IMG/VR virus record: IMGVR_UViG_3300023184_004198 | Location: 1 to 64,000 of that record | Direction: 5' to 3' (one strand) | Length of the DNA stretch: 64,000 nt | In this document: positions 17,801-28,882 of the stretch, one piece after another | Position numbering within the stretch: the first letter of the stretch is position 1 | Layout of the letters: each line of letters begins with the position of its first letter | The notes under the pieces: model-generated | What the model was told of the DNA's origin: nothing | The model's database searches: none | The model's input: the letters and a program-made list of their open reading frames with translations, nothing else | Position numbers and translations under genes: made by a program

Positions 17801-18775
17801 AGTCACTTGGACAATTCAGGTGTTATTTTGATCAGCAACACTTGTGTGCCCTTGGTAAGTCACTGGGGTTCAGCAGTTATCATGGACGGTAACTTCAACG
17901 GTGACGAAGGCTTCTCATTCACATACAATCGCAGCAACTACGGCTTGCCGGCCACAACAGGTGCCAGCCAGACTGCGTTCTTGATGCGCTTGGCACCCAG
18001 TGTTTCAAACAGTGTTATTGGTGACTTGGGTGTGCGTGATCTTATCAATCGTGCGCAGTTGACCCTGCAAACGCTGACAGTGAATGTGAGTGCGGGACGA
18101 TACATTGTGACAGGTATTTTGAATCCCAACAACATTGACTCGGCCAACACTGTGTGGGCTGGCCTGAACAATGCTGGCGGTGGTTTCCAGCCCAGTTTTA
18201 CACAGTTTGCTGTGGCTCCTCGATACAACAACGAAACCACAGGTGGTGTGCAGGCTGCACCACTCAATACCACAGGTGGTTTCTCGCGATCAGGCACCAT
18301 GGTCAGTTCAAGCAGTGTTAAAACATTCTCTGGGCTGAGTCTGACCAATGTATCCAGTTCAGGTTCAACAGCCAACGTCACAGTGACATTGCAGGCATTG
18401 AAAACTGCATATAGTGATACCACAACTGCACTCTCCATTCAAAATCCTGGCACAGGATATGCTGTGGGCGATACTGTGAAGATTCTTGGTAGTGCATTGG
18501 GCGGAACAAGTCCTGCCAACGACTTGTTCTTGACCGTGGCTGCGGTATCAGCAGACGTCACAGGCGGTGAACGACTGTTTGCCATACCAATTCAGGCCAC
18601 AGGTGTCAACAATTTGGATCTAACACAGATCAAGCAAATTGGACAAAGTTCAATTCCAGGTACAGGTACCTATCCCAACGGACCAGAAGTGCTGGCTGTG
18701 GTGATCACAGCACTGAGCACACAGTCCAGCCCGGTTGGTGAGATTCAGTTGAGTTTCCAAGAAAGCCAGGCCTAA
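14819..18775 (+). CDS. Large virion structural protein (1318 aa)
   Basis: Thr/Ser/Gly/Asn-rich multi-beta-domain ORF at the end of the fibre operon, with motifs DAIGRSRVSNPESLIDADFEYG and TKKYFRYQSGKG. Confidence 0.65.
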   Translation: MARKRIYEYVFTPGTAGLGTVQVQDRINLEDFLAIYDTTTNTSIYNFGAPTQGGTVSFSTGTIAGLPNAYAGVTTLNLDLDTSTLSANDKLAIYVEDRNISTQPWEFGLDAIGRSRVSNPESLIDADFEYGLQNTKWQNVSTINNIPSFYEDVGADLVYNTNGYATLLSSTNLLTSNVDTSVNTADAGTPPFITNDYALLISQTQGNVTPFVTSYLTANVNSSAERTFTVASTTGLSALDNIMLIGLPTSGGTTIAVANITSNATTTVNVTSAAGAGIVAGTYVIAQTATANVYEVMAVTSVSTNALTVVRQSNGTNPSAANINIGANIFVASTIEVAQVQEVTDGTTLQLNRGWYNIPAANTFPTGTVFQKLSSNVELVKMTTASTAVNGTQTISRTQFNTTALTTAGIGSPLIRMTGIFYGGSNTVPTVTVNVTDTPLDANEYVSLQNTSATNAEGINIVYLGETNNFAYYPRRSIAVAPGYPLNQTDTAVRQAFPYTGADLDIVSIASDGGNPSIITVTTLYAHGLFPGCPITVDMTAGTNTAYAEGSFIINAIPSTTTFQFQAKTGAVVSGSLSGVINVRSNAIFLARPFDGGVLMGPGTPTRGASATRVTKKYFRYQSGKGILFSTGTVLAPTLDVSSVTSSGTAINSNITITTDAEHGLNAGATIALSGITTSGYDDTGYVVTSITSDTAFVVQAQNVLGSATPVLGQQPRINVTGWSGSCIRAGLFDDQNGLFWENNGVSVNAVQRTSTFQTAGLVNVSVGSNLVTGDGNCRFQDQLNVGDVVVIRGMTHSVASITNNNRMTVVPTFRGVSNQTRVKMALRNEIRVRQADFNIDPLDGTGASGFNLDASKMQMYALEYSWYGAGTVIWMLRGQDGKFNWAHRRPNNNLNNEAYMRSGNLPARYEAINETPVNSLNGAITDSQTTITLRDATDYPPASVTYPSYVMIDSEVIKYSGKNGNDLTGCTRGATFTQWAEGQSRSYTSSAATSHLDNSGVILISNTCVPLVSHWGSAVIMDGNFNGDEGFSFTYNRSNYGLPATTGASQTAFLMRLAPSVSNSVIGDLGVRDLINRAQLTLQTLTVNVSAGRYIVTGILNPNNIDSANTVWAGLNNAGGGFQPSFTQFAVAPRYNNETTGGVQAAPLNTTGGFSRSGTMVSSSSVKTFSGLSLTNVSSSGSTANVTVTLQALKTAYSDTTTALSIQNPGTGYAVGDTVKILGSALGGTSPANDLFLTVAAVSADVTGGERLFAIPIQATGVNNLDLTQIKQIGQSSIPGTGTYPNGPEVLAVVITALSTQSSPVGEIQLSFQESQA

Positions 18776-19197
18776 GAACCAGCAGCAAGATAACGCTCTA
18801 CAGTGTCTATCTTGCTCTGCACTGCTTCTATGTTCACTGTTGACCACAGGCCAGGATGCATGGGTCTAGGCCATTGACCTCGATCAATCCAGGCATAGCC
18901 CATGTGTTCTTCATTGAGCACAGGCACAAACTCATCTGTGACAACACATACCCAGGTGTTGTATTCAAACTGACCATCTGCTGATGTGAATTTTTCCAGT
19001 GGAACCAAACGTTGATATTCAGGCATTGCACCCAGTTCTTCAATGCATTCACGTTCCATGGCACCCAACAATGTTTCGCCTGACTCTACTTTGCCGCCAG
19101 GCAGTCCCCATGAGCCAGGATGACGTGTGTCATTGCGCAACAGATACAAATACCGTCCAGTGGCGCTGCTACGGAACCAAACTCCCACTGCCTTCAA
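18772..19197 (-). CDS. NUDIX hydrolase
   Basis: Nudix box GGKVESGETLLGAMERECIEELG. Start placed at the TTG overlapping the upstream TGA (MKAVGVWF). Confidence 0.9.
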   Translation of the reverse strand: MKAVGVWFRSSATGRYLYLLRNDTRHPGSWGLPGGKVESGETLLGAMERECIEELGAMPEYQRLVPLEKFTSADGQFEYNTWVCVVTDEFVPVLNEEHMGYAWIDRGQWPRPMHPGLWSTVNIEAVQSKIDTVERYLAAGS

Positions 19198-20597
19198 AGC
19201 ACAATTCTCCAGGTGCCTCCTGGATATGCACCTTGGTAACTTTTGACCCAAGCATCACCCATCCAGCGATATTGAATGCCTGTGGTAAGGTTTGTGACAT
19301 ACTGTGTAGTATTGGTTTCTGTGGCGGCACGGAATACCACACGCCAGTAGTTGTTTGAGTATTGAATGATGTCATTGGCCTGCGCCACTAGCCCACGTCC
19401 ATTAGCACCAACCCATGCACTGGCAGGATTGGGATTGTCCAATGACCCTGTGTCTTCTGTGAGCAAATAGCGTTGGCCATCAATGGCACTGTCTAGCCCA
19501 TCTTGTGGACCAGAAGTCAATGGATTGATCACAGCATCAATAGGATCCAGTGTATTTTGTGGTGTGGTGTCAATGTCCACATCAAACAATAAAAATCTAT
19601 CGTCGTTGGGGTCTAATGCAATGGTACCCACAACTTCTGTCTCGTCAGGTTGTATCAATCGTATTTGACTGATGCCAGGACGCAATGATCCATACAAGTC
19701 AATCACTGCTGGCCACAACAAATTTGAATCAGGCACAATTTCAGTTGGAGCCAATGAATCATTACTGGGTTCTTCGGCAAGATACTTTTGTTGCAAACAC
19801 TGTAGTTTGTTGCCAATTAGCACAGCGGCATAGTTGAACGGAGTAATAACTTGTCTGGTGCCCATCAGCAGGTCTTCGTTGTCAATGGCGTTGTTCAAGT
19901 CACCTTGTGCATCGTACATTGACGCAATCACACGCTCAATCACACCCAGTTTCAACACTTTGGCAGGAGGTGATATCCAGATAGGCATGCTGAATTGCAG
20001 TGTGGCAATGTCAATGGGATTTTCTGTGCTAATGGGCACCGTGCGACTGCTCCAAGTGGTGCGATCCAGGTACATCACACTCAAACTGGTCCAGTCAATG
20101 TAGTTGTCAGTGCTTTGAATTTCCAAACTGGGATTGAACAGCGTTAGTATTTGTTCTAAAATTTGCAATTTTTGATTGGTATTTGATGTCCATATGTCCA
20201 AATTGATAGTGAGCTTGAATGGCACAGGCATCAATCGTTCAATAGTAAACGCATTGCCTTGTGTGGTTTCATAAGTTTCAGTGGCAGGGTCGTAAGTTTG
20301 TTGACGCACGTTGATTCTGCTGACAAAGTAAGGGTCTTGCATGCGACTTTGTTCATAGTCCAGGCCAGTGATATAAAAAGTCATCAATGGAGTAGAGGGC
20401 AAACTGTTACGACTGTTTTCTTGTATGATAGTTTGAGCATTACGTGTAGCATCGCCATATCGCACAGGCACACGAATCAAGGCGGCAGCATTTACTCCGT
20501 CGTTTTCGTTGGCATACTCTACTTGAAATCCTGAAAAGATTCTGGTGAATTGCAGTAAGAATCTGCGTATTTGTTCATCGTAAAAAAATTGCTGAAT
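19194..20597 (-). CDS. gp15: Tail sheath stabiliser/terminator, gp15-like, with C-terminal extension; probable ATT start
   Basis: gp15-like core VPVRYGD...PLMTFYITGLDYEQSR...PVPFKLTINLDIWT...LEQILTLFNP. The frame is open 39 codons upstream of the track start, to ATT-CAG-CAA-TTT-TTT-TAC behind SD GGAG. Confidence 0.7.
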   Translation of the reverse strand: MQQFFYDEQIRRFLLQFTRIFSGFQVEYANENDGVNAAALIRVPVRYGDATRNAQTIIQENSRNSLPSTPLMTFYITGLDYEQSRMQDPYFVSRINVRQQTYDPATETYETTQGNAFTIERLMPVPFKLTINLDIWTSNTNQKLQILEQILTLFNPSLEIQSTDNYIDWTSLSVMYLDRTTWSSRTVPISTENPIDIATLQFSMPIWISPPAKVLKLGVIERVIASMYDAQGDLNNAIDNEDLLMGTRQVITPFNYAAVLIGNKLQCLQQKYLAEEPSNDSLAPTEIVPDSNLLWPAVIDLYGSLRPGISQIRLIQPDETEVVGTIALDPNDDRFLLFDVDIDTTPQNTLDPIDAVINPLTSGPQDGLDSAIDGQRYLLTEDTGSLDNPNPASAWVGANGRGLVAQANDIIQYSNNYWRVVFRAATETNTTQYVTNLTTGIQYRWMGDAWVKSYQGAYPGGTWRIVL

Positions 20598-20611
20598 TTT
20601 AATTCTCCTGG

Positions 20612-21952
20612 TTAGGTGCCAGGCGGTAAGAAGCCACCTTGATCACCATTGTCTGCTCGGGGGCGAAGAATTTCGCTCAAACTCTGACGACTTGGAATGT
20701 TACCCAGGTCTTTGGTGCTGACAGTAGCAGTGTTATTTACGAAGCCACTACGCAGTGTTTTATTTGTTGGACCATTGTTGAGATTGGTGCGAACTTTGTC
20801 ATCGACTTTGACCCAACGTGCGCCATCATAACGGAATAACCGATTGGGTTTGTAATCTAGGCGTAGCACATAAGCACCTGCCACAGGATTGGGTGGGAAG
20901 TTCACCGCAGGAGTAACTGGCAAACCATTGGGTGCCGCACCGCCACCAGTGAGGTAACCGGCAGCATATCCTTCTCCTGTGGGAGTAACACTGCCACCAC
21001 CTTGTGTACCGTCTACTGTGGTAGTTTCATCAGCGGTCAAACTGGTAGGATTGGCTGGTGTACCTGTCAACGTAGTAGGCTCAATGTAGAATGTGGTATT
21101 GTCGTAACCTGACAGCGGCACTTCTGCGTCTGCTTGTGCCAAGATGGCGTCATTGATTTCGGTGTCTTTGTTGCGTGTGCCTTGAACATCGCTGATGGTA
21201 CTTGGTGTGTACTCTTGCCAAAACGTAGTATTTGTAATATCGGTATCAGCAGGCACATTGCTTTGTGCTTGGTAATAAGTGTTACCATAGTTTACAATGG
21301 TACCAGTGGGATAAAAATTGCCCGGATCCCATATATTTTCTGCCACAAAAGGCTTGTTGGTAATTTGGTTGAACTCTTGTTGATCCTTCATGGGTGTGCA
21401 TTTCACACGCCACAAGTGCGGCAACCAAGTTACTGAAAAGCCTTCTGAAGCATAGTCAGCATCTTGAATCACGTAGTATCTGGGCAAGGCTCGTGGTATG
21501 TTTTGATTCAGTGGATGATAGTCTTTGAGATTGGGAATCTCTATCACATCACCGTTCATGAGTTTGCGACCAAATGTGTCAATCATGTCGTTGTAGTGAA
21601 ACGTCATGAATATGGTGTCATTGTTTAAAAACAAACCAAATTGAGTCAAATCAAAGTCCACGTCCTGGGTGTTGTACACACCGCGCATGACATACACATC
21701 AGGGTCATACACTCGGTCGCGGTTTTCCAGCAACAGCAGGTCTTGAATGTTTAGCACATCCACAGTTTCATATGTGGGCTGTGTGGCGTCAAAGTTGCCA
21801 CTCAATGCTGAATCATTGCCTCCGGCCTGCGGTCCTTTGTACTTGTGAACATAAATGTCCAAGCCGCCCACAGTGTACATTTCACTGATGGTGCGGTCCA
21901 GGAATTGATAATCTCTGGTGCGATTTGGGCGGTATAGGGATAAGCGTGGCAT
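20612..21952 (-). CDS. gp14: Neck/head-closure protein, gp14-like, with accessory domains
   Basis: LLLLENRDRVYD...DLTQFGLF...IFMTFHYNDM...GDVIEIPNL...HLWRVKCTP pattern, adjacent to gp15- and gp13-like genes. Confidence 0.65.
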   Translation of the reverse strand: MPRLSLYRPNRTRDYQFLDRTISEMYTVGGLDIYVHKYKGPQAGGNDSALSGNFDATQPTYETVDVLNIQDLLLLENRDRVYDPDVYVMRGVYNTQDVDFDLTQFGLFLNNDTIFMTFHYNDMIDTFGRKLMNGDVIEIPNLKDYHPLNQNIPRALPRYYVIQDADYASEGFSVTWLPHLWRVKCTPMKDQQEFNQITNKPFVAENIWDPGNFYPTGTIVNYGNTYYQAQSNVPADTDITNTTFWQEYTPSTISDVQGTRNKDTEINDAILAQADAEVPLSGYDNTTFYIEPTTLTGTPANPTSLTADETTTVDGTQGGGSVTPTGEGYAAGYLTGGGAAPNGLPVTPAVNFPPNPVAGAYVLRLDYKPNRLFRYDGARWVKVDDKVRTNLNNGPTNKTLRSGFVNNTATVSTKDLGNIPSRQSLSEILRPRADNGDQGGFLPPGT

Positions 21953-23183: not shown

Positions 23184-23202
23184 CAGGGACTTGGAGTCCC
23201 AC

Positions 23203-23973
23203 ATGCCAGAACAGCAACAACAATCACTGTCCACACTGAAGCAAAACTTAATTGAATATGTCAAACTTCAGTTGGGCGGTGATATCATTGACCTAGAACT
23301 AGATCCTTCACACTACGAAGCGGCTTATCAAAAAACCATTGGCACTTATCGCCAACGAGCCAACAACGCCTATGAAGAGAGTTATAGTTTCATGCAGTTG
23401 GTTTCGGACGTTAACATTTACGAACTGCCCCAAGAAGTTGTAAGTGTGCGTCAAATATTCCGCAGAACATTTGGCGATAGTTCAGGACCGTTTGCATCAA
23501 ACTTTGATCCGTTTGCACAGGCTTCAATCAATGTGTACTTGATGAACTTCAACGTGGCGGGTGGTTTGGCCACTTACGATTTCTATACTCAATACATTGA
23601 ACTGGCTGGGCGCATGTTTGGTGCGTACATGAACTATACTTGGAATCCAGTTACCAAAAAACTGCAACTGATCCGTGATCCCAAAGGTTCAGGAGAAACT
23701 GTGTTGTTGTGGACCTACAACTTGAAGCCTGAATTTAATTTGCTCAGCGACTACCAAATCTCGCAATGGATCCGTGACTACATGGTGGCCAACTGCAAAA
23801 TGATCATTGGCGAAGCACGTGAGAAATTTGGCACTATTGCCGGACCGCAAGGTGGCGGTAGTTTAAATGGTGCAGCCATGAAGTCAGAAGCCAAAGTAGA
23901 AATGGACTTGTTGATCAATCAATTGGTAATGTATGTGGATGGAAGTCAGCCTCTTACATTTGTTATTGGCTAA
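23203..23973 (+). CDS. gp13: Neck/head-tail adaptor, gp13-like
   Basis: LIEYVKLQLGGDIIDLELD...YELPQEVVSVRQIF...WIRDYMVANCKMIIGEAREKF...GGSLNG. Start placed at the ATG behind GGAG. Confidence 0.8.
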   Translation: MPEQQQQSLSTLKQNLIEYVKLQLGGDIIDLELDPSHYEAAYQKTIGTYRQRANNAYEESYSFMQLVSDVNIYELPQEVVSVRQIFRRTFGDSSGPFASNFDPFAQASINVYLMNFNVAGGLATYDFYTQYIELAGRMFGAYMNYTWNPVTKKLQLIRDPKGSGETVLLWTYNLKPEFNLLSDYQISQWIRDYMVANCKMIIGEAREKFGTIAGPQGGGSLNGAAMKSEAKVEMDLLINQLVMYVDGSQPLTFVIG

Positions 23974-25585: not shown

Positions 25586-28500
25586 ATGGCACTAGTATCA
25601 CCAGGCGTAGAAGTAACAGTAATTGACGAGAGTCAGTATATCCCTTCTGCTGTCAACACAGTACCCTATTTTTTAATCGCCACAGCACAGAACAAAGCTG
25701 ATGCAGCTGGCGTTGGTGTAGCAGCAGGCACAACCGCTGCCAACGCAAATAAAACTTATCTCATTACCAGTCAGCGAGATTTGGCAGCCACATTTGGTGT
25801 GCCATTCTTTTACAATACCACAACTGGTACCCCCATCAATGGTTACGAACTCAATGAGTACGGTTTGCTGGCAGCATACTCGGCACTGGGTGTTACAAAT
25901 CGTGCTTATGTACAGCGTGTAGACATTGACCTAACCGAACTCACAGCCAGTTTGACTCGTCCCACTGGTAATGCCAACAACGGTACATACTGGTTAGACA
26001 CCAGCACCAGTCTCTGGGGCATTTTTGAGTGGGATCAAACAGCCGCGACATTCACCAATCAAGTGCCTATTGTGATCACAGACACAGCAGATGTGGTAGA
26101 CTATGCTGGCGGAGACTACACACCACTCAGTACCATTGGCAGCATTGGCGACTATGCTGTGAGCGCAGTGAGTTTAAACAATGAAAACTGGTACAAAAAT
26201 ACCAGCAATGATTGGGTATTATTGGGCTCTGATGCATGGAAAAATTCTTGGGCCACAGTACAGGGCACAAATTCAGTGACTGGTAGTGGATTGACCATTG
26301 GTTCTAACATGTACATCAATGGTACATTGGCCACAGTTGGTGCTACCAACACTGTGGCAGGTTTTGCCGCAGTTATCAATGCATTGAACATTACAGGTGT
26401 TACTGCTGCTTCTGTCAGCAACAAACTCACTTTGTATGCAGACAGCGCCGCAACCAATGACGGATCCACAGACAATGGTGGTGTGATCAGTATTCAAACA
26501 GGTACCATTGGCGGTGCTGCATTGTTGACTACTTTGGGTATTGCTGCCATTGAATATCGTGCTCCAAGTTATTTCCCAGGCTATAGTTATCAAGCTCCTC
26601 GTTGGAGAATCACAGATGTAGCACCTGCACCCACAGGATCTGTATGGCAAAATGTCAGCACAGCCAGCACTGGTATGAATTTAAAAATGAAAAAATACAG
26701 TGCTGCATTGGACACCTGGGTAGCACAAAGCACTCCTGCATACGTATATGATGGGGCAGCAAATTATGGACTTGACCCCACAGGTGGTGGTAAAAATATT
26801 CCTGTCGGTAGCACTTATGTGCAATACAACAACGAAGCGTATAACACTACCCCTAACCCCAATGCTACTTTTATGATTCTTGAAAGAATAGCACTGGGCG
26901 CCACTGTTGTCACTGGTGATACAACTCCAGGTAGCAATGGAGACAGTTTGTTCACAAGTGGCAATCAATTTAATATCTTTGCAACCTCAGCAGGAACAGA
27001 TGTCACTGCTGGACCTTACAGCGTGACTTTGAGTGGCACAAGTGTTGCATCATTTATCACCGATGTAAGTGCTGCCAATGTTCCTTATGTGAGTGCCAGT
27101 GTTAACAGTGCTGGGAACATTGTGTTTACACACAGCCAAGGTGGTGCAATTTACCTAGACAACATAACCGGTTCACCAGTTACCACTGCTGGATTTACCA
27201 CAGCCACACCAAAAGTTCGTCAAGATCAATCTGCTGGAATTTTGGTATTGAGCAATTGGGTCACAACTGATTTGTTCAACTATACTGCAAGTGATGTTGC
27301 ACCAGATCAAAATCCAGCTGATGGTCGTTTGTGGTATTACAGCAGTATCAGTGATGTAGACATCATGATTCAGGACAATGGAACATGGCAAGGTTATCAA
27401 AATGTCACAAACGACACTCGTGGTTTTGACTTGACACTGACCAATGCATCTGGTCCTATTATTGCTGCCACAGAACCAATGACACAAAACGATGCAGCTG
27501 AAAGCCCACTGCAATATGGTGATTTGTGGATTGACTCAAGTGATCTTGAAAACTATCCCAAGTTGTATCGTTGGGAACAGGTCAGTGGAACAGATCAATG
27601 GGTCTCAGTTGACACCACAGATCAAATCACATCAAACGGTATTTTATTTGCAGACGCACGTTGGGCACCAAACGGCACAACTGATCCAGTGGCAGATCCA
27701 TTCCCCACAATTGAAAGTTTGTTGATCAGCGATTATTTGGATCTGGATGCACCCGATCCCGCATTGTATCCCCAAGGTATGTTGTTGTTCAACACACGCC
27801 GTTCAGGCTACAATGTCAAGAGTTTCCAAAGCAATTACTTTAATTCAACCACGTTCCCTGACGACACACTGCCTGCGGTGACCAATACCTGGCTCACTGC
27901 ATCAGGCAACAAAGATGACGGGGCTATGTACGCTGGACGGCTGGCACAACGCAAGTTGATTGTGGCTGCCATGAAGTCAGGCATAGACACAAGTTTGGCT
28001 GCACGTGAAGAACAAAATCAATTCAACTTGATTGCTGCACCTGCTTATCCTGAACTGTTGACCAATTTGGTTGCACTCAGCAACGAACGTGCTAACACAC
28101 TGTTTGTTGTGGGCGATACTCCAATGCGTTTGTCAAACAGTGGTACTGATCTAGTAACACATGCTACCAACAACAATGGACTTGGCGTACCAACAGAAGA
28201 TGGATTGACTATTGGTTCAGCCTATGCTGCTGTGTTCTATCCTTCATGTCAGACCACTGACTTGTCAGGCAACACAGTTGTTGCACCACCCACACACATG
28301 ATGGTACGCACAATCCTGCGCAGTGATGCGGTGAGTTATCCATGGTTGGCACCTGCTGGCACACGTCGTGGTGTAGTAGATAATGCTAATGCAATTGGTT
28401 ACATCAATGCACAAACTGGCGAATTCGTGCAGTTGGCTGTGGGTCAAGGTGTACGTGATATATTGTATGAAAACAACATCAACCCAATTACCTTTATTCC

Positions 28501-28882
28501 AGGTATTGGTATCACAAACTTTGGTAACAAAACACGTCAAGGTGCTACCACAGCCCTGGATCGTATCAACGTTGCACGACTGATCTGCTTCTTGCGTGGT
28601 CGCTTAGAAGAAATTGGTAAACTGTATTTGTTTGAACCCAATGATCAAATTACACGCAATGAGATCACCAACACTGTGAACAGTTTGATGATTGACCTTG
28701 TGGCCAAACGTGCTATCTATGACTATTTGGTTGTGTGCGACTTGAGTAACAACACTCCTGCACGTATTGACCGTAATGAGTTGTGGGTCGACGTTGCTAT
28801 TGAACCAGTCAAAGCAGTTGAATTTATCTATATTCCATTGCGTATCAAGAACACTGGAGAAATTTCAGGACTCAATGCTTGA
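25586..28882 (+). CDS. gp18: Contractile tail sheath protein
   Basis: MALVSPGVEVTVIDES...; C-terminal YPWLAPAGTRRG, LYENNINPI, GNKT, ALDRINVARL, FEPND and IEPVKAVEFIYI. Confidence 0.95.
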   Translation: MALVSPGVEVTVIDESQYIPSAVNTVPYFLIATAQNKADAAGVGVAAGTTAANANKTYLITSQRDLAATFGVPFFYNTTTGTPINGYELNEYGLLAAYSALGVTNRAYVQRVDIDLTELTASLTRPTGNANNGTYWLDTSTSLWGIFEWDQTAATFTNQVPIVITDTADVVDYAGGDYTPLSTIGSIGDYAVSAVSLNNENWYKNTSNDWVLLGSDAWKNSWATVQGTNSVTGSGLTIGSNMYINGTLATVGATNTVAGFAAVINALNITGVTAASVSNKLTLYADSAATNDGSTDNGGVISIQTGTIGGAALLTTLGIAAIEYRAPSYFPGYSYQAPRWRITDVAPAPTGSVWQNVSTASTGMNLKMKKYSAALDTWVAQSTPAYVYDGAANYGLDPTGGGKNIPVGSTYVQYNNEAYNTTPNPNATFMILERIALGATVVTGDTTPGSNGDSLFTSGNQFNIFATSAGTDVTAGPYSVTLSGTSVASFITDVSAANVPYVSASVNSAGNIVFTHSQGGAIYLDNITGSPVTTAGFTTATPKVRQDQSAGILVLSNWVTTDLFNYTASDVAPDQNPADGRLWYYSSISDVDIMIQDNGTWQGYQNVTNDTRGFDLTLTNASGPIIAATEPMTQNDAAESPLQYGDLWIDSSDLENYPKLYRWEQVSGTDQWVSVDTTDQITSNGILFADARWAPNGTTDPVADPFPTIESLLISDYLDLDAPDPALYPQGMLLFNTRRSGYNVKSFQSNYFNSTTFPDDTLPAVTNTWLTASGNKDDGAMYAGRLAQRKLIVAAMKSGIDTSLAAREEQNQFNLIAAPAYPELLTNLVALSNERANTLFVVGDTPMRLSNSGTDLVTHATNNNGLGVPTEDGLTIGSAYAAVFYPSCQTTDLSGNTVVAPPTHMMVRTILRSDAVSYPWLAPAGTRRGVVDNANAIGYINAQTGEFVQLAVGQGVRDILYENNINPITFIPGIGITNFGNKTRQGATTALDRINVARLICFLRGRLEEIGKLYLFEPNDQITRNEITNTVNSLMIDLVAKRAIYDYLVVCDLSNNTPARIDRNELWVDVAIEPVKAVEFIYIPLRIKNTGEISGLNA

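What the first reader, a model, noticed from the sequence alone, without database searches (positions are those of the whole stretch)
20480..20614. gp15-like gene appears to start at AUU
Seen: the track starts at TTG 20480, but the frame is open upstream through IQQFFYDEQIRRFLLQFTRIFSGFQVEY, which reads like a real gp15 N-terminus. There is no in-frame ATG/GTG/TTG before the stop at 20645-20643. An SD GGAG (20608-20605) lies 7 nt before ATT at 20597, right after the gp14 stop. Established: AUU initiation is rare and sensitive to IF3 (infC autoregulation). Inference: a deliberate weak or IF3-responsive start sets low stoichiometry of the tail terminator.
Basis: partly seen in the sequence, partly recalled or inferred. 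Interest (0 to 1): 0.65.

Follow-up and report, generated by a model that had tools for sequence, protein, structure and literature searches.

The report
Phage tail-terminator gene starting at AUU
The tail-terminator (gp15-like) gene of this uncultured freshwater jumbo phage almost certainly starts at the rare codon AUU behind a strong ribosome-binding site. Dozens of related phages keep exactly this pairing, while their other relatives use AUG with no ribosome-binding site.

Summary
On the minus strand the gp15-like frame is open from 20642. The first ATG/GTG/TTG is TTG 20480. ATT 20597 lies 7 nt after AGGAG (20609-20605) and 14 nt after the upstream gene's TAA.

The 39 codons before the TTG are the most conserved part of the protein, and Pfam T4-gp15_tss matches from residue 5. 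Contigs from three independent lake studies carry the same ATT.

Across 205 distinct IMG/VR junctions of this gene:
- 75 have ATT, all with GGAG or GGGG 6-9 nt upstream.
- 130 have ATG, and only one of these has GGAG at 7 nt.
- When the third base is left free behind the SD cassette, it is T in 53 of 53 cases.
- A conserved internal Ile prefers ATA, so the ATT does not behave like an Ile codon.

The ATT state needs at least 8 switches on the protein tree, and the window's closest kin (92-97% aa) use an overlapping TAATG start. ATT initiation occurs only at this gene in the 212-kb contig.

Best reading: this is real AUU initiation, translationally coupled and compensated by a strong SD. It is an alternative to the AUG/no-SD arrangement and keeps terminator output moderate. 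IF3 responsiveness is plausible but untested. It is a new member of a known kind.

The parts
19194..20597 (-). gp15-like tail terminator / sheath stabiliser CDS, 467 codons plus stop (19196-19194), read from ATT 20597
   Evidence: The translation is open. PF16724 scores 94.9 bits against a cut-off of 25, and phrog_11196 gives E 5e-82. The best fold matches are T4 gp15 (9mkb, 4huh, 4hud). Homologues of 459-481 aa match end to end.
20595..20597 (-). Proposed initiation codon ATT (AUU)
   Evidence: It aligns with the Met of ATG-type homologues. It is ATT in 53 of 53 relatives with the SD cassette when the third base is left free. Three independent assemblies read it identically.
20604..20609 (-). 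Shine-Dalgarno AGGAGA, with the GGAG core ending 7 nt before ATT
   Evidence: Seen directly in the sequence. G at -10 is present in 75 of 76 ATT-type junctions and G at -11 in 65 of 76. The spacing is 7 nt in 64 of the 75 true ATT junctions.
20598..20603 (-). A-rich spacer ending in AAA directly before ATT; it contains a second in-frame ATT (20603-20601) that is not conserved
   Evidence: In ATT-type junctions A at -1 is 76/76, at -2 is 73/76 and at -3 is 59/76, while -4 and -5 vary freely. The ATT at -6 is absent from spacers such as GAAACAAA and GAACCAAA in relatives.
20481..20594 (-). Codons 2-39, the conserved N-terminal segment lost if TTG 20480 is taken as the start
   Evidence: Invariant F5 Y6 D7 Q9 R11 R12 F13 L15 Q16 R19 S22 F24. 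The Pfam profile matches from position 2.
20478..20480 (-). TTG, the first canonical start codon (the called start); an internal Leu codon
   Evidence: In other ATT-type loci the first canonical codon is a different one (codon 14-26), so this TTG is not conserved as a start.
20643..20645 (-). In-frame TGA that closes the gp15 frame upstream
20612..21952 (-). Upstream co-oriented gene (446 aa virion structural protein) with stop TAA 20614-20612, 14 nt before ATT
   Evidence: phrog_11591, E 1e-80, with no Pfam hit. The same order (structural protein, gp15-like, NUDIX) is found in Pseudomonas phage PA5oct, whose annotation marks both structural products ESI-MS/MS.
18772..19251 (-). Downstream NUDIX hydrolase ORF; the start is uncertain because the TTG 19251 version overlaps the gp15 end
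   Evidence: phrog_1198, E 4e-22.

Best explanation
The gp15-like tail-terminator gene is translated from AUU at 20597. Initiator tRNA reads the near-cognate codon because a strong SD (AGGAGA) at the optimal 7-nt spacing and an A-rich spacer hold the 30S subunit there. Ribosomes finishing the upstream structural gene 14 nt away supply local subunits (translational coupling).

This SD-AUU module is one of two interchangeable designs used by this phage clade for the same junction. The other is AUG with no SD, placed on or within 3 nt of the upstream stop (TAATG). Both designs avoid the high output of SD+AUG, so the hexameric terminator is made at a moderate, fixed ratio to its neighbour.

Shown here: the coordinates, conservation of the N-terminus, reproducibility of the ATT, the ATT/SD covariation, and the repeated switches.
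Inferred: that AUU is the codon actually used, that translation is coupled, and that output is equalised between the two designs. IF3 discrimination probably applies as a general rule but was not tested.
For: - No canonical start lies between TGA 20645 and the conserved N-terminus.
- Pfam, PHROG and homologue alignments all start at residues 1-5.
- ATT is read in assemblies from three studies with 0 differences.
- Of 205 distinct junctions in IMG/VR, 75 are ATT, all with GGAG/GGGG at 6-9 nt. The other 130 are ATG, and only L328 among them has GGAG at 7 nt. L189 was reclassified as ATG.
- The third base is T in 53 of 53 gp15 matches when left free. A conserved internal Ile in the same genes uses ATA 58, ATC 13 and ATT 3.
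- The ATT state needs 9 changes on the gp15 tree, at least 8 of them forced by well-supported branches. The nearest kin, at 92-97% aa, are ATG-type.
- In 9 independent contrasts the SD goes with ATT about 8.8 times and against it 0 times, p about 0.004.
- Within one close clade the homologous spacer reads GGAG...ATT, GGTAA...ATG or AAAGAA...GTG, or is deleted to give TAATG.
- E. coli reporters: a coupled SD+AUU junction gives about 4-fold less than SD+AUG, and no-SD overlaps give 3-8-fold less than SD overlaps (PMC3592434).
- S. aureus AUU/AUA starts are likewise paired with conserved, extended SDs and give about 10% of the AUG level (PMC13009471).
Against: - There is no protein or ribosome-profiling evidence for this phage, and the host is unknown, so SD use and AUU tolerance of its ribosomes are assumed.
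- SD and ATT are 7 nt apart and would move together by recombination. The 8-9 'switches' may therefore be transfers of one old cassette, not independent inventions. L077 carries a footprint of such an insertion.
- The output equivalence of the two designs rests on E. coli reporter data.
In the similarity-ranked sample, 12 of 79 scored loci are ATT.
- The structure model is poor over residues 1-70 (pLDDT 28-53). It does not show that the N-terminus is structurally indispensable.
Confidence: 0.8

Rival explanations
1. Sequencing or assembly error: the true codon is ATG.
For: The contig is a metagenome assembly, and a single base separates ATT from ATG.
Against: Contigs from three studies are identical across 20595-20597. 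The same ATT is found in 75 distinct junctions from many samples, always with an SD.
Confidence: 0.01
2. Translation starts at the called TTG 20480, giving a protein without the first 39 residues; the upstream open frame is a remnant.
For: It is the first canonical start codon.
Against: The 39 codons hold 12 invariant residues and are the best-conserved block. Pfam and PHROG profiles match from their first positions. The TTG is not at a conserved position in other ATT-type loci, and no GGAG lies before it.
Confidence: 0.03
3. Another near-cognate codon is used, for example the ATT at 20603 only 1 nt after the SD core, giving a protein two residues longer (the same length as Atu_ph07's MALDY...).
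For: ATT 20603 is in frame, and the N-terminus would then align without a gap to Atu_ph07 and Phosso.
Against: One nucleotide of SD spacing is non-functional by established rules. This ATT is absent from most ATT-type relatives, whereas the ATT corresponding to 20597 is invariant.
Confidence: 0.04
4. gp15 is made as a fusion with, or a frameshift product of, the upstream protein (-1 shift within the 28-nt overlap 20642-20615).
For: The gp15 frame is open for 15 codons upstream and overlaps the end of the upstream gene in the -1 frame.
Against: There is no slippery heptamer in 20642-20615. ATT-type loci have unrelated upstream C-termini, and upstream open stretches are as short as 4-8 codons. 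Homologues are separate genes, and the PA5oct record annotates both products as separate CDSs marked ESI-MS/MS.
Confidence: 0.01
5. The AUU start is a regulatory sensor, not just an attenuator. Terminator synthesis rises when IF3 proofreading weakens (late infection, a shifted ribosome/IF3 ratio, or a phage factor), which times tail completion.
For: IF3 discriminates against AUU in E. coli (infC, pcnB), as cited in the Hecht preprint 10.1101/063800 and in PMC3592434. ATT is held invariant although a single change to ATG is possible.
Against: Close relatives manage with AUG/no-SD junctions that would not sense IF3. No IF3 gene and no tRNA is found in the contig. There are no expression data.
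Confidence: 0.15

Closest known systems
E. coli infC and pcnB (AUU-initiated genes)
   Same: An AUU start codon with an SD and no alternative canonical start. The inefficient codon limits output, and infC is also translationally coupled to the preceding gene (a 3-nt gap).
   Different: The product here is a virion structural protein, not IF3, so there can be no autoregulatory loop. Here the AUU design alternates with an AUG/no-SD design among close relatives. IF3 dependence is untested.
S. aureus cvfC1 (AUU), ccpN and citZ (AUA) with extended SD motifs (PMC13009471)
   Same: A conserved non-canonical start codon paired with a conserved, unusually strong SD, with output reduced to roughly a tenth of AUG.
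   Different: Those are cellular regulatory or metabolic genes shown by Ribo-Ret and reporters. The phage case rests on comparative genomics only.
T4 gp15 tail terminator / sheath stabiliser (PF16724; PDB 4HUD, 4HUH, 9MKB)
   Same: The N-terminal 238 residues match the family profile, and the best fold hits are T4 gp15. The gene sits in a neck/tail module near a sheath gene.
   Different: The protein is about 200 residues longer, with a beta-rich C-terminal extension. At 36% identity its nearest cultured kin are PA5oct, Atu_ph07 and Phosso, which use ATG.
Stop-start overlap coupling (UAAUG, AUGA) in operons
   Same: ATG-type relatives of this gene use exactly this arrangement, with a gap of -1 to 3 nt in 89 of 122 junctions. 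The window's gene also lies within coupling distance.
   Different: The window has a 14-nt spacer carrying its own SD, and a non-AUG codon.

Membership tests
T4 gp15-type tail terminator (PF16724) | Sequence match to the family profile above the curated cut-off | tested here: met
   94.9 bits against a cut-off of 25, residues 5-238 to profile positions 2-216. phrog_227 'tail sheath stabilizer' gives E 8e-24.
T4 gp15-type tail terminator (PF16724) | gp15 fold | tested here: inconclusive
   The top Foldseek hits are T4 gp15 chains (9mkb_AB E 1e-5; 4huh, 4hud; probability 1.00). However, the model is poor in this domain (pLDDT 28-68, TMt about 0.5).
T4 gp15-type tail terminator (PF16724) | Position in a neck/tail gene module of a myovirus | tested here: met
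   A tail sheath gene lies at 25586-28882, a head-tail adaptor at 23191-23973, and virion structural genes on both sides.
T4 gp15-type tail terminator (PF16724) | Hexameric ring capping the tube and sheath | not testable with these tools
   Needs a virion structure.
AUU-initiated bacterial-type genes (infC/pcnB kind) | No in-frame ATG/GTG/TTG between the upstream stop and the conserved N-terminus | tested here: met
   for the window. The same holds in 10 of 12 ATT-type loci checked.
AUU-initiated bacterial-type genes (infC/pcnB kind) | AUU conserved among orthologues, not drifting like an Ile codon | tested here: met
   53 of 53 ATT with the third base free, against ATA 58, ATC 13 and ATT 3 at an internal Ile. 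Conservation applies to one class of junction, not to the whole family.
AUU-initiated bacterial-type genes (infC/pcnB kind) | SD at functional spacing | tested here: met
   AGGAG 7 nt upstream in the window, and all 75 true ATT junctions have GGAG/GGGG at 6-9 nt (L189 excluded).
AUU-initiated bacterial-type genes (infC/pcnB kind) | Protein N-terminus (fMet/Met) mapped to the AUU | not testable with these tools
   No proteomic data exist for this uncultured phage.
AUU-initiated bacterial-type genes (infC/pcnB kind) | Expression repressed by IF3 | not testable with these tools
   Needs reporters with varied IF3 levels.
infC-type autoregulation | The gene product is the factor that discriminates against its own start codon | tested here: not met
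   The product is a tail terminator, and no IF3_C domain is found anywhere in the 212-kb contig.

The most novel reading that the evidence does not exclude
The SD-AUU module may be a mobile, selectively maintained translational 'governor' for the tail terminator. It would spread among uncultured freshwater jumbo phages by recombination at the gene junction. It would also make terminator synthesis depend on the fidelity state of host initiation (IF3 level, ribosome quality, infection stage), so that tail capping is timed or matched to host physiology. That would be the first conserved AUU-start regulatory device in a phage structural gene.
Probability: 0.15. Interest if true: 0.75.

Novelty: new member of a known kind. 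Interest (0 to 1): 0.5.

Why it matters
- Annotation: gene callers cut 39 conserved residues from this protein, and probably from every ATT-type homologue in public viral catalogues. At least 75 distinct junctions are affected.
- Biology: only two AUU starts are confirmed in E. coli (Hecht et al., bioRxiv 10.1101/063800). Here a whole clade offers about 200 natural variants of one junction in which start-codon strength and SD strength trade off almost perfectly. SD+AUG is nearly absent (1 of 205). This is a ready-made natural experiment on how translation-initiation strength is tuned and kept constant. It also suggests that over-production of the tail terminator is selected against.

Tried and rejected
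- Megablast of the region against cultured phages found no match; the nearest cultured kin are 36% identical.
- A PDB sequence search with the protein found no hit.
- The RNA fold of -50..+50 around the start shows no significant structure (z = -1.1), so an occluding hairpin or riboswitch-like element is rejected.
- ATT is not used as a start genome-wide: only 20597 qualifies. The other long open leaders are non-coding overlaps with low-complexity translations.
- Neither a phage tRNA (aragorn) nor an IF3_C domain is present in the 212-kb contig. The contig is only about 61% complete.
- The AlphaFold model built from 37 homologues has mean pLDDT 62.6, and the N-terminal domain is too poor to judge the role of residues 1-39.
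- Literature searches for ATT/AUU starts in phage tail genes or jumbo phages found no report.
- L189, counted at first as 'ATT without SD', has ATG as its next codon and is an ATG-type junction.
- The metagenome-contig scan, the large protein searches and complex prediction were not used, because the viral-contig data were sufficient.
Full report
**Setting.**
The window is the first 64 kb of a 212,614-bp IMG/VR viral contig. CheckV estimates it at 61% complete, and GC is 44.6%. It belongs to an uncultured freshwater jumbo myovirus. The best cultured matches of the protein in question are Pseudomonas phage PA5oct, Agrobacterium phage Atu_ph07 and Sinorhizobium phage Phosso, at about 36% amino-acid identity. 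There is no nucleotide-level match among cultured phages.

**Check of the observation.**
All positions below are on the minus strand.
- The gp15-like frame is closed by TGA at 20645-20643.
- It then runs open to the stop at 19196-19194.
- The first ATG/GTG/TTG is TTG at 20480, which is the called start.
- The upstream co-oriented gene (20612-21952) ends with TAA at 20614-20612.
- AGGAGA lies at 20609-20604, followed by the spacer AATTAAA and then ATT at 20597-20595.
- A second in-frame ATT sits at 20603-20601.

**The upstream 39 codons are coding.**
- Read from ATT 20597, the protein has 467 residues.
- Pfam T4-gp15_tss (PF16724) matches residues 5-238 to profile positions 2-216, at 94.9 bits against a cut-off of 25.
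- phrog_11196 matches residues 3-467 to positions 4-438 of 441.
- PA5oct, Atu_ph07 and Phosso homologues start with Met one to two residues from the position aligned with the ATT.
- In an alignment of 37 homologues, 12 of the first 24 residues are invariant.
- Foldseek places T4 gp15 (9mkb, 4huh, 4hud) at the top, although the model is weak in that domain.

**The ATT is not an error.**
Logan contigs from three runs of three different lake or freshwater studies cross 20595-20597 with no difference from the window. These are X1 record 7, X6 record 22 and X2 record 9. One of the three may be the source sample. The same samples also contain strains whose sequence diverges exactly at the junction into ATG-type starts, seen as loose ends at 20591.

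**Relatives.**
A protein-guided scan of IMG/VR returned at least 598 relatives, and the best 80 (62-97% identity) were kept.
- At the aligned first codon most have ATG with no SD, often as a TAATG overlap with the upstream stop.
- Twelve have ATT preceded by AGGAG or GGGG at 7 nt and AAA at -3..-1.
- Two have GTG, and one (L066) has ATC behind GGGAG.
- In 10 of 12 ATT-type loci checked (the window included), no canonical codon lies between the upstream in-frame stop and the ATT.

Pattern scans extended this picture.
- With the SD cassette fixed and the third base of the codon left free, all 53 distinct gp15 matches read ATT. None read ATG, ATC or ATA.
- With only the codon and the conserved N-terminal coding pattern fixed, there are 205 distinct junctions. 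L189 was corrected to ATG.
- Of these, 75 are ATT with GGAG or GGGG at 6-9 nt, 0 are ATT without an SD, and 130 are ATG. Five of the ATG junctions have an incidental SD-like word, and only one (L328) has GGAG at 7 nt.

A conserved internal isoleucine in the same ATT-type genes uses ATA 58, ATC 13 and ATT 3. The first codon therefore does not evolve like an Ile codon. Positions -4 and -5 vary freely, whereas -1, -2, -10 and the ATT are essentially fixed. One ATT-type locus (L142) lies on a 349-kb contig.

**Phylogenetic pattern.**
- On a maximum-likelihood tree of 76 gp15 proteins, with the start columns excluded, the ATT state needs 9 changes. At least 8 of them are forced by well-supported branches.
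- The window's nearest relatives (L005-L010, 92-97% identity) are ATG-type.
- In 9 independent contrasts the SD changes together with the codon in about 8.8 and never in the opposite direction, p about 0.004.
- The same upstream C-termini (for example FLPPGT, PGQKSS, PRPPGR, RADNGG) occur with both designs.

Within the window's own clade the homologous spacer appears in four forms:
- strong SD + ATT (window, L013);
- decayed SD + ATG (L014);
- decayed SD + GTG (L016);
- spacer deleted, giving TAATG (L005, L010).

Because SD and codon are adjacent, some of the switches are probably recombinational transfers of a cassette. L077 keeps an out-of-frame remnant of an older ATG start 28 nt upstream of its SD-ATT.

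**Specificity within the genome.**
- In the whole contig only this site combines AGGAG, 5-8 nt, ATT, a long ORF and no upstream canonical start. By comparison, 23 ATG genes carry AGGAG.
- Among 263 crude gene calls this gene has the longest open leader (54 codons).
- About 60% of genes have no SD-like word, and only about 25 have AGGAG or GGAGG.
- The other long leaders are non-coding overlaps.
- No tRNA and no IF3 domain is encoded in the contig.
- No significant RNA structure surrounds the start.

**Mechanism.**
The best-supported reading is genuine AUU initiation at 20597.
- The strong SD at optimal spacing and the A-rich spacer compensate for the near-cognate codon.
- The upstream stop lies 14 nt away. 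In relatives it lies 11-15 nt away or inside the spacer, which allows translational coupling.
- In E. coli reporters a coupled SD+AUU junction gives about one quarter of SD+AUG. No-SD stop-start overlaps give one third to one eighth of their SD-containing versions (PMC3592434). The two natural designs should therefore give similar, moderate outputs.
- The near absence of SD+ATG (1 of 205) then reads as selection against over-producing the terminator.
- From established knowledge, T4 gp15 forms a single hexamer per virion (PDB 4HUD/4HUH entries).
- S. aureus offers a parallel: conserved AUU/AUA starts with extended SDs at about 10% of AUG output (PMC13009471).
- IF3 sensitivity follows from general knowledge of infC and pcnB, as cited in the Hecht preprint 10.1101/063800, but nothing here tests it.

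**Rivals.**
- Assembly error is excluded.
- A start at TTG 20480 conflicts with the conservation of residues 2-39.
- A start at ATT 20603 has 1-nt SD spacing and is not conserved.
- A frameshift fusion lacks a slippery site and any conserved overlap.
- A regulatory, IF3-sensing role remains possible but unsupported.

**Comparison and novelty.**
The protein is a member of the T4 gp15 tail-terminator family by profile and best fold hits. It carries an extra C-terminal domain of about 230 residues. The initiation device works like infC/pcnB and the S. aureus AUU genes, but it cannot be infC-type autoregulation. I found no report of AUU starts in phage tail genes or jumbo phages in the searchable literature. 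I class it as a new member of a known kind. Its added value is a large natural series showing SD and start-codon compensation.

**Limits.**
- There is no proteomic, transcript or ribosome-profiling evidence.
- The host is unknown.
- The laid data were assembled contigs, not raw reads.
- The N-terminal domain of the structure model is unreliable.

Noticed in passing
L077:2795-2825: An out-of-frame remnant 'ATG CAA CAA TTT' lies 28 nt upstream of the SD-ATT start, right after the upstream gene's TAA. It looks like the old ATG-type start left behind when an SD-ATT cassette was inserted or recombined in, with CAATTT duplicated.
   Followed up: partly
L066:1340-1360: ATC sits at the aligned start codon, with GGGAG 6 nt upstream and no in-frame canonical start in the 17 open codons before it. 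All its close kin use ATG. This may be an AUC start or an error in that contig.
   Followed up: partly
L328 (minus strand, start about 6848): This is the only junction of 205 that combines GGAG at 7 nt with ATG, the combination otherwise avoided. The gene runs off the locus end after 421 codons.
   Followed up: partly
window 19194-19251: As listed from TTG 19251, the downstream NUDIX hydrolase ORF (18772-19251, minus strand) would overlap the gp15 3' end by 58 nt. Its real start is probably further downstream. PA5oct has the same gp15-NUDIX order.
   Followed up: no
window 19197-19850 (residues about 250-467 of the protein): The gp15-like protein has a beta-rich C-terminal extension of about 230 residues that is absent from T4 gp15. 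It is the best-predicted part of the model (pLDDT 76-91) and has no Pfam family.
   Followed up: no
window 20612-21952: The upstream '14-like' gene has no Pfam match and hits only phrog_11591 (virion structural protein). A head-tail adaptor homologue (phrog_211) is encoded separately at 23191-23973 on the + strand, so the gp14 label is doubtful.
   Followed up: partly
window 20585-20600, in runs X1, X2, X6 and X7: The same lake metagenomes hold strains whose contigs diverge from the window exactly at the junction into ATG-type starts. Both designs therefore co-occur in one habitat.
   Followed up: partly
whole contig G000 (212,614 bp): There are no tRNA genes, which is unusual for a jumbo phage although the contig is incomplete. 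About 60% of 263 crude gene calls lack any SD-like motif, which suggests a host or phage with weak SD dependence.
   Followed up: partly
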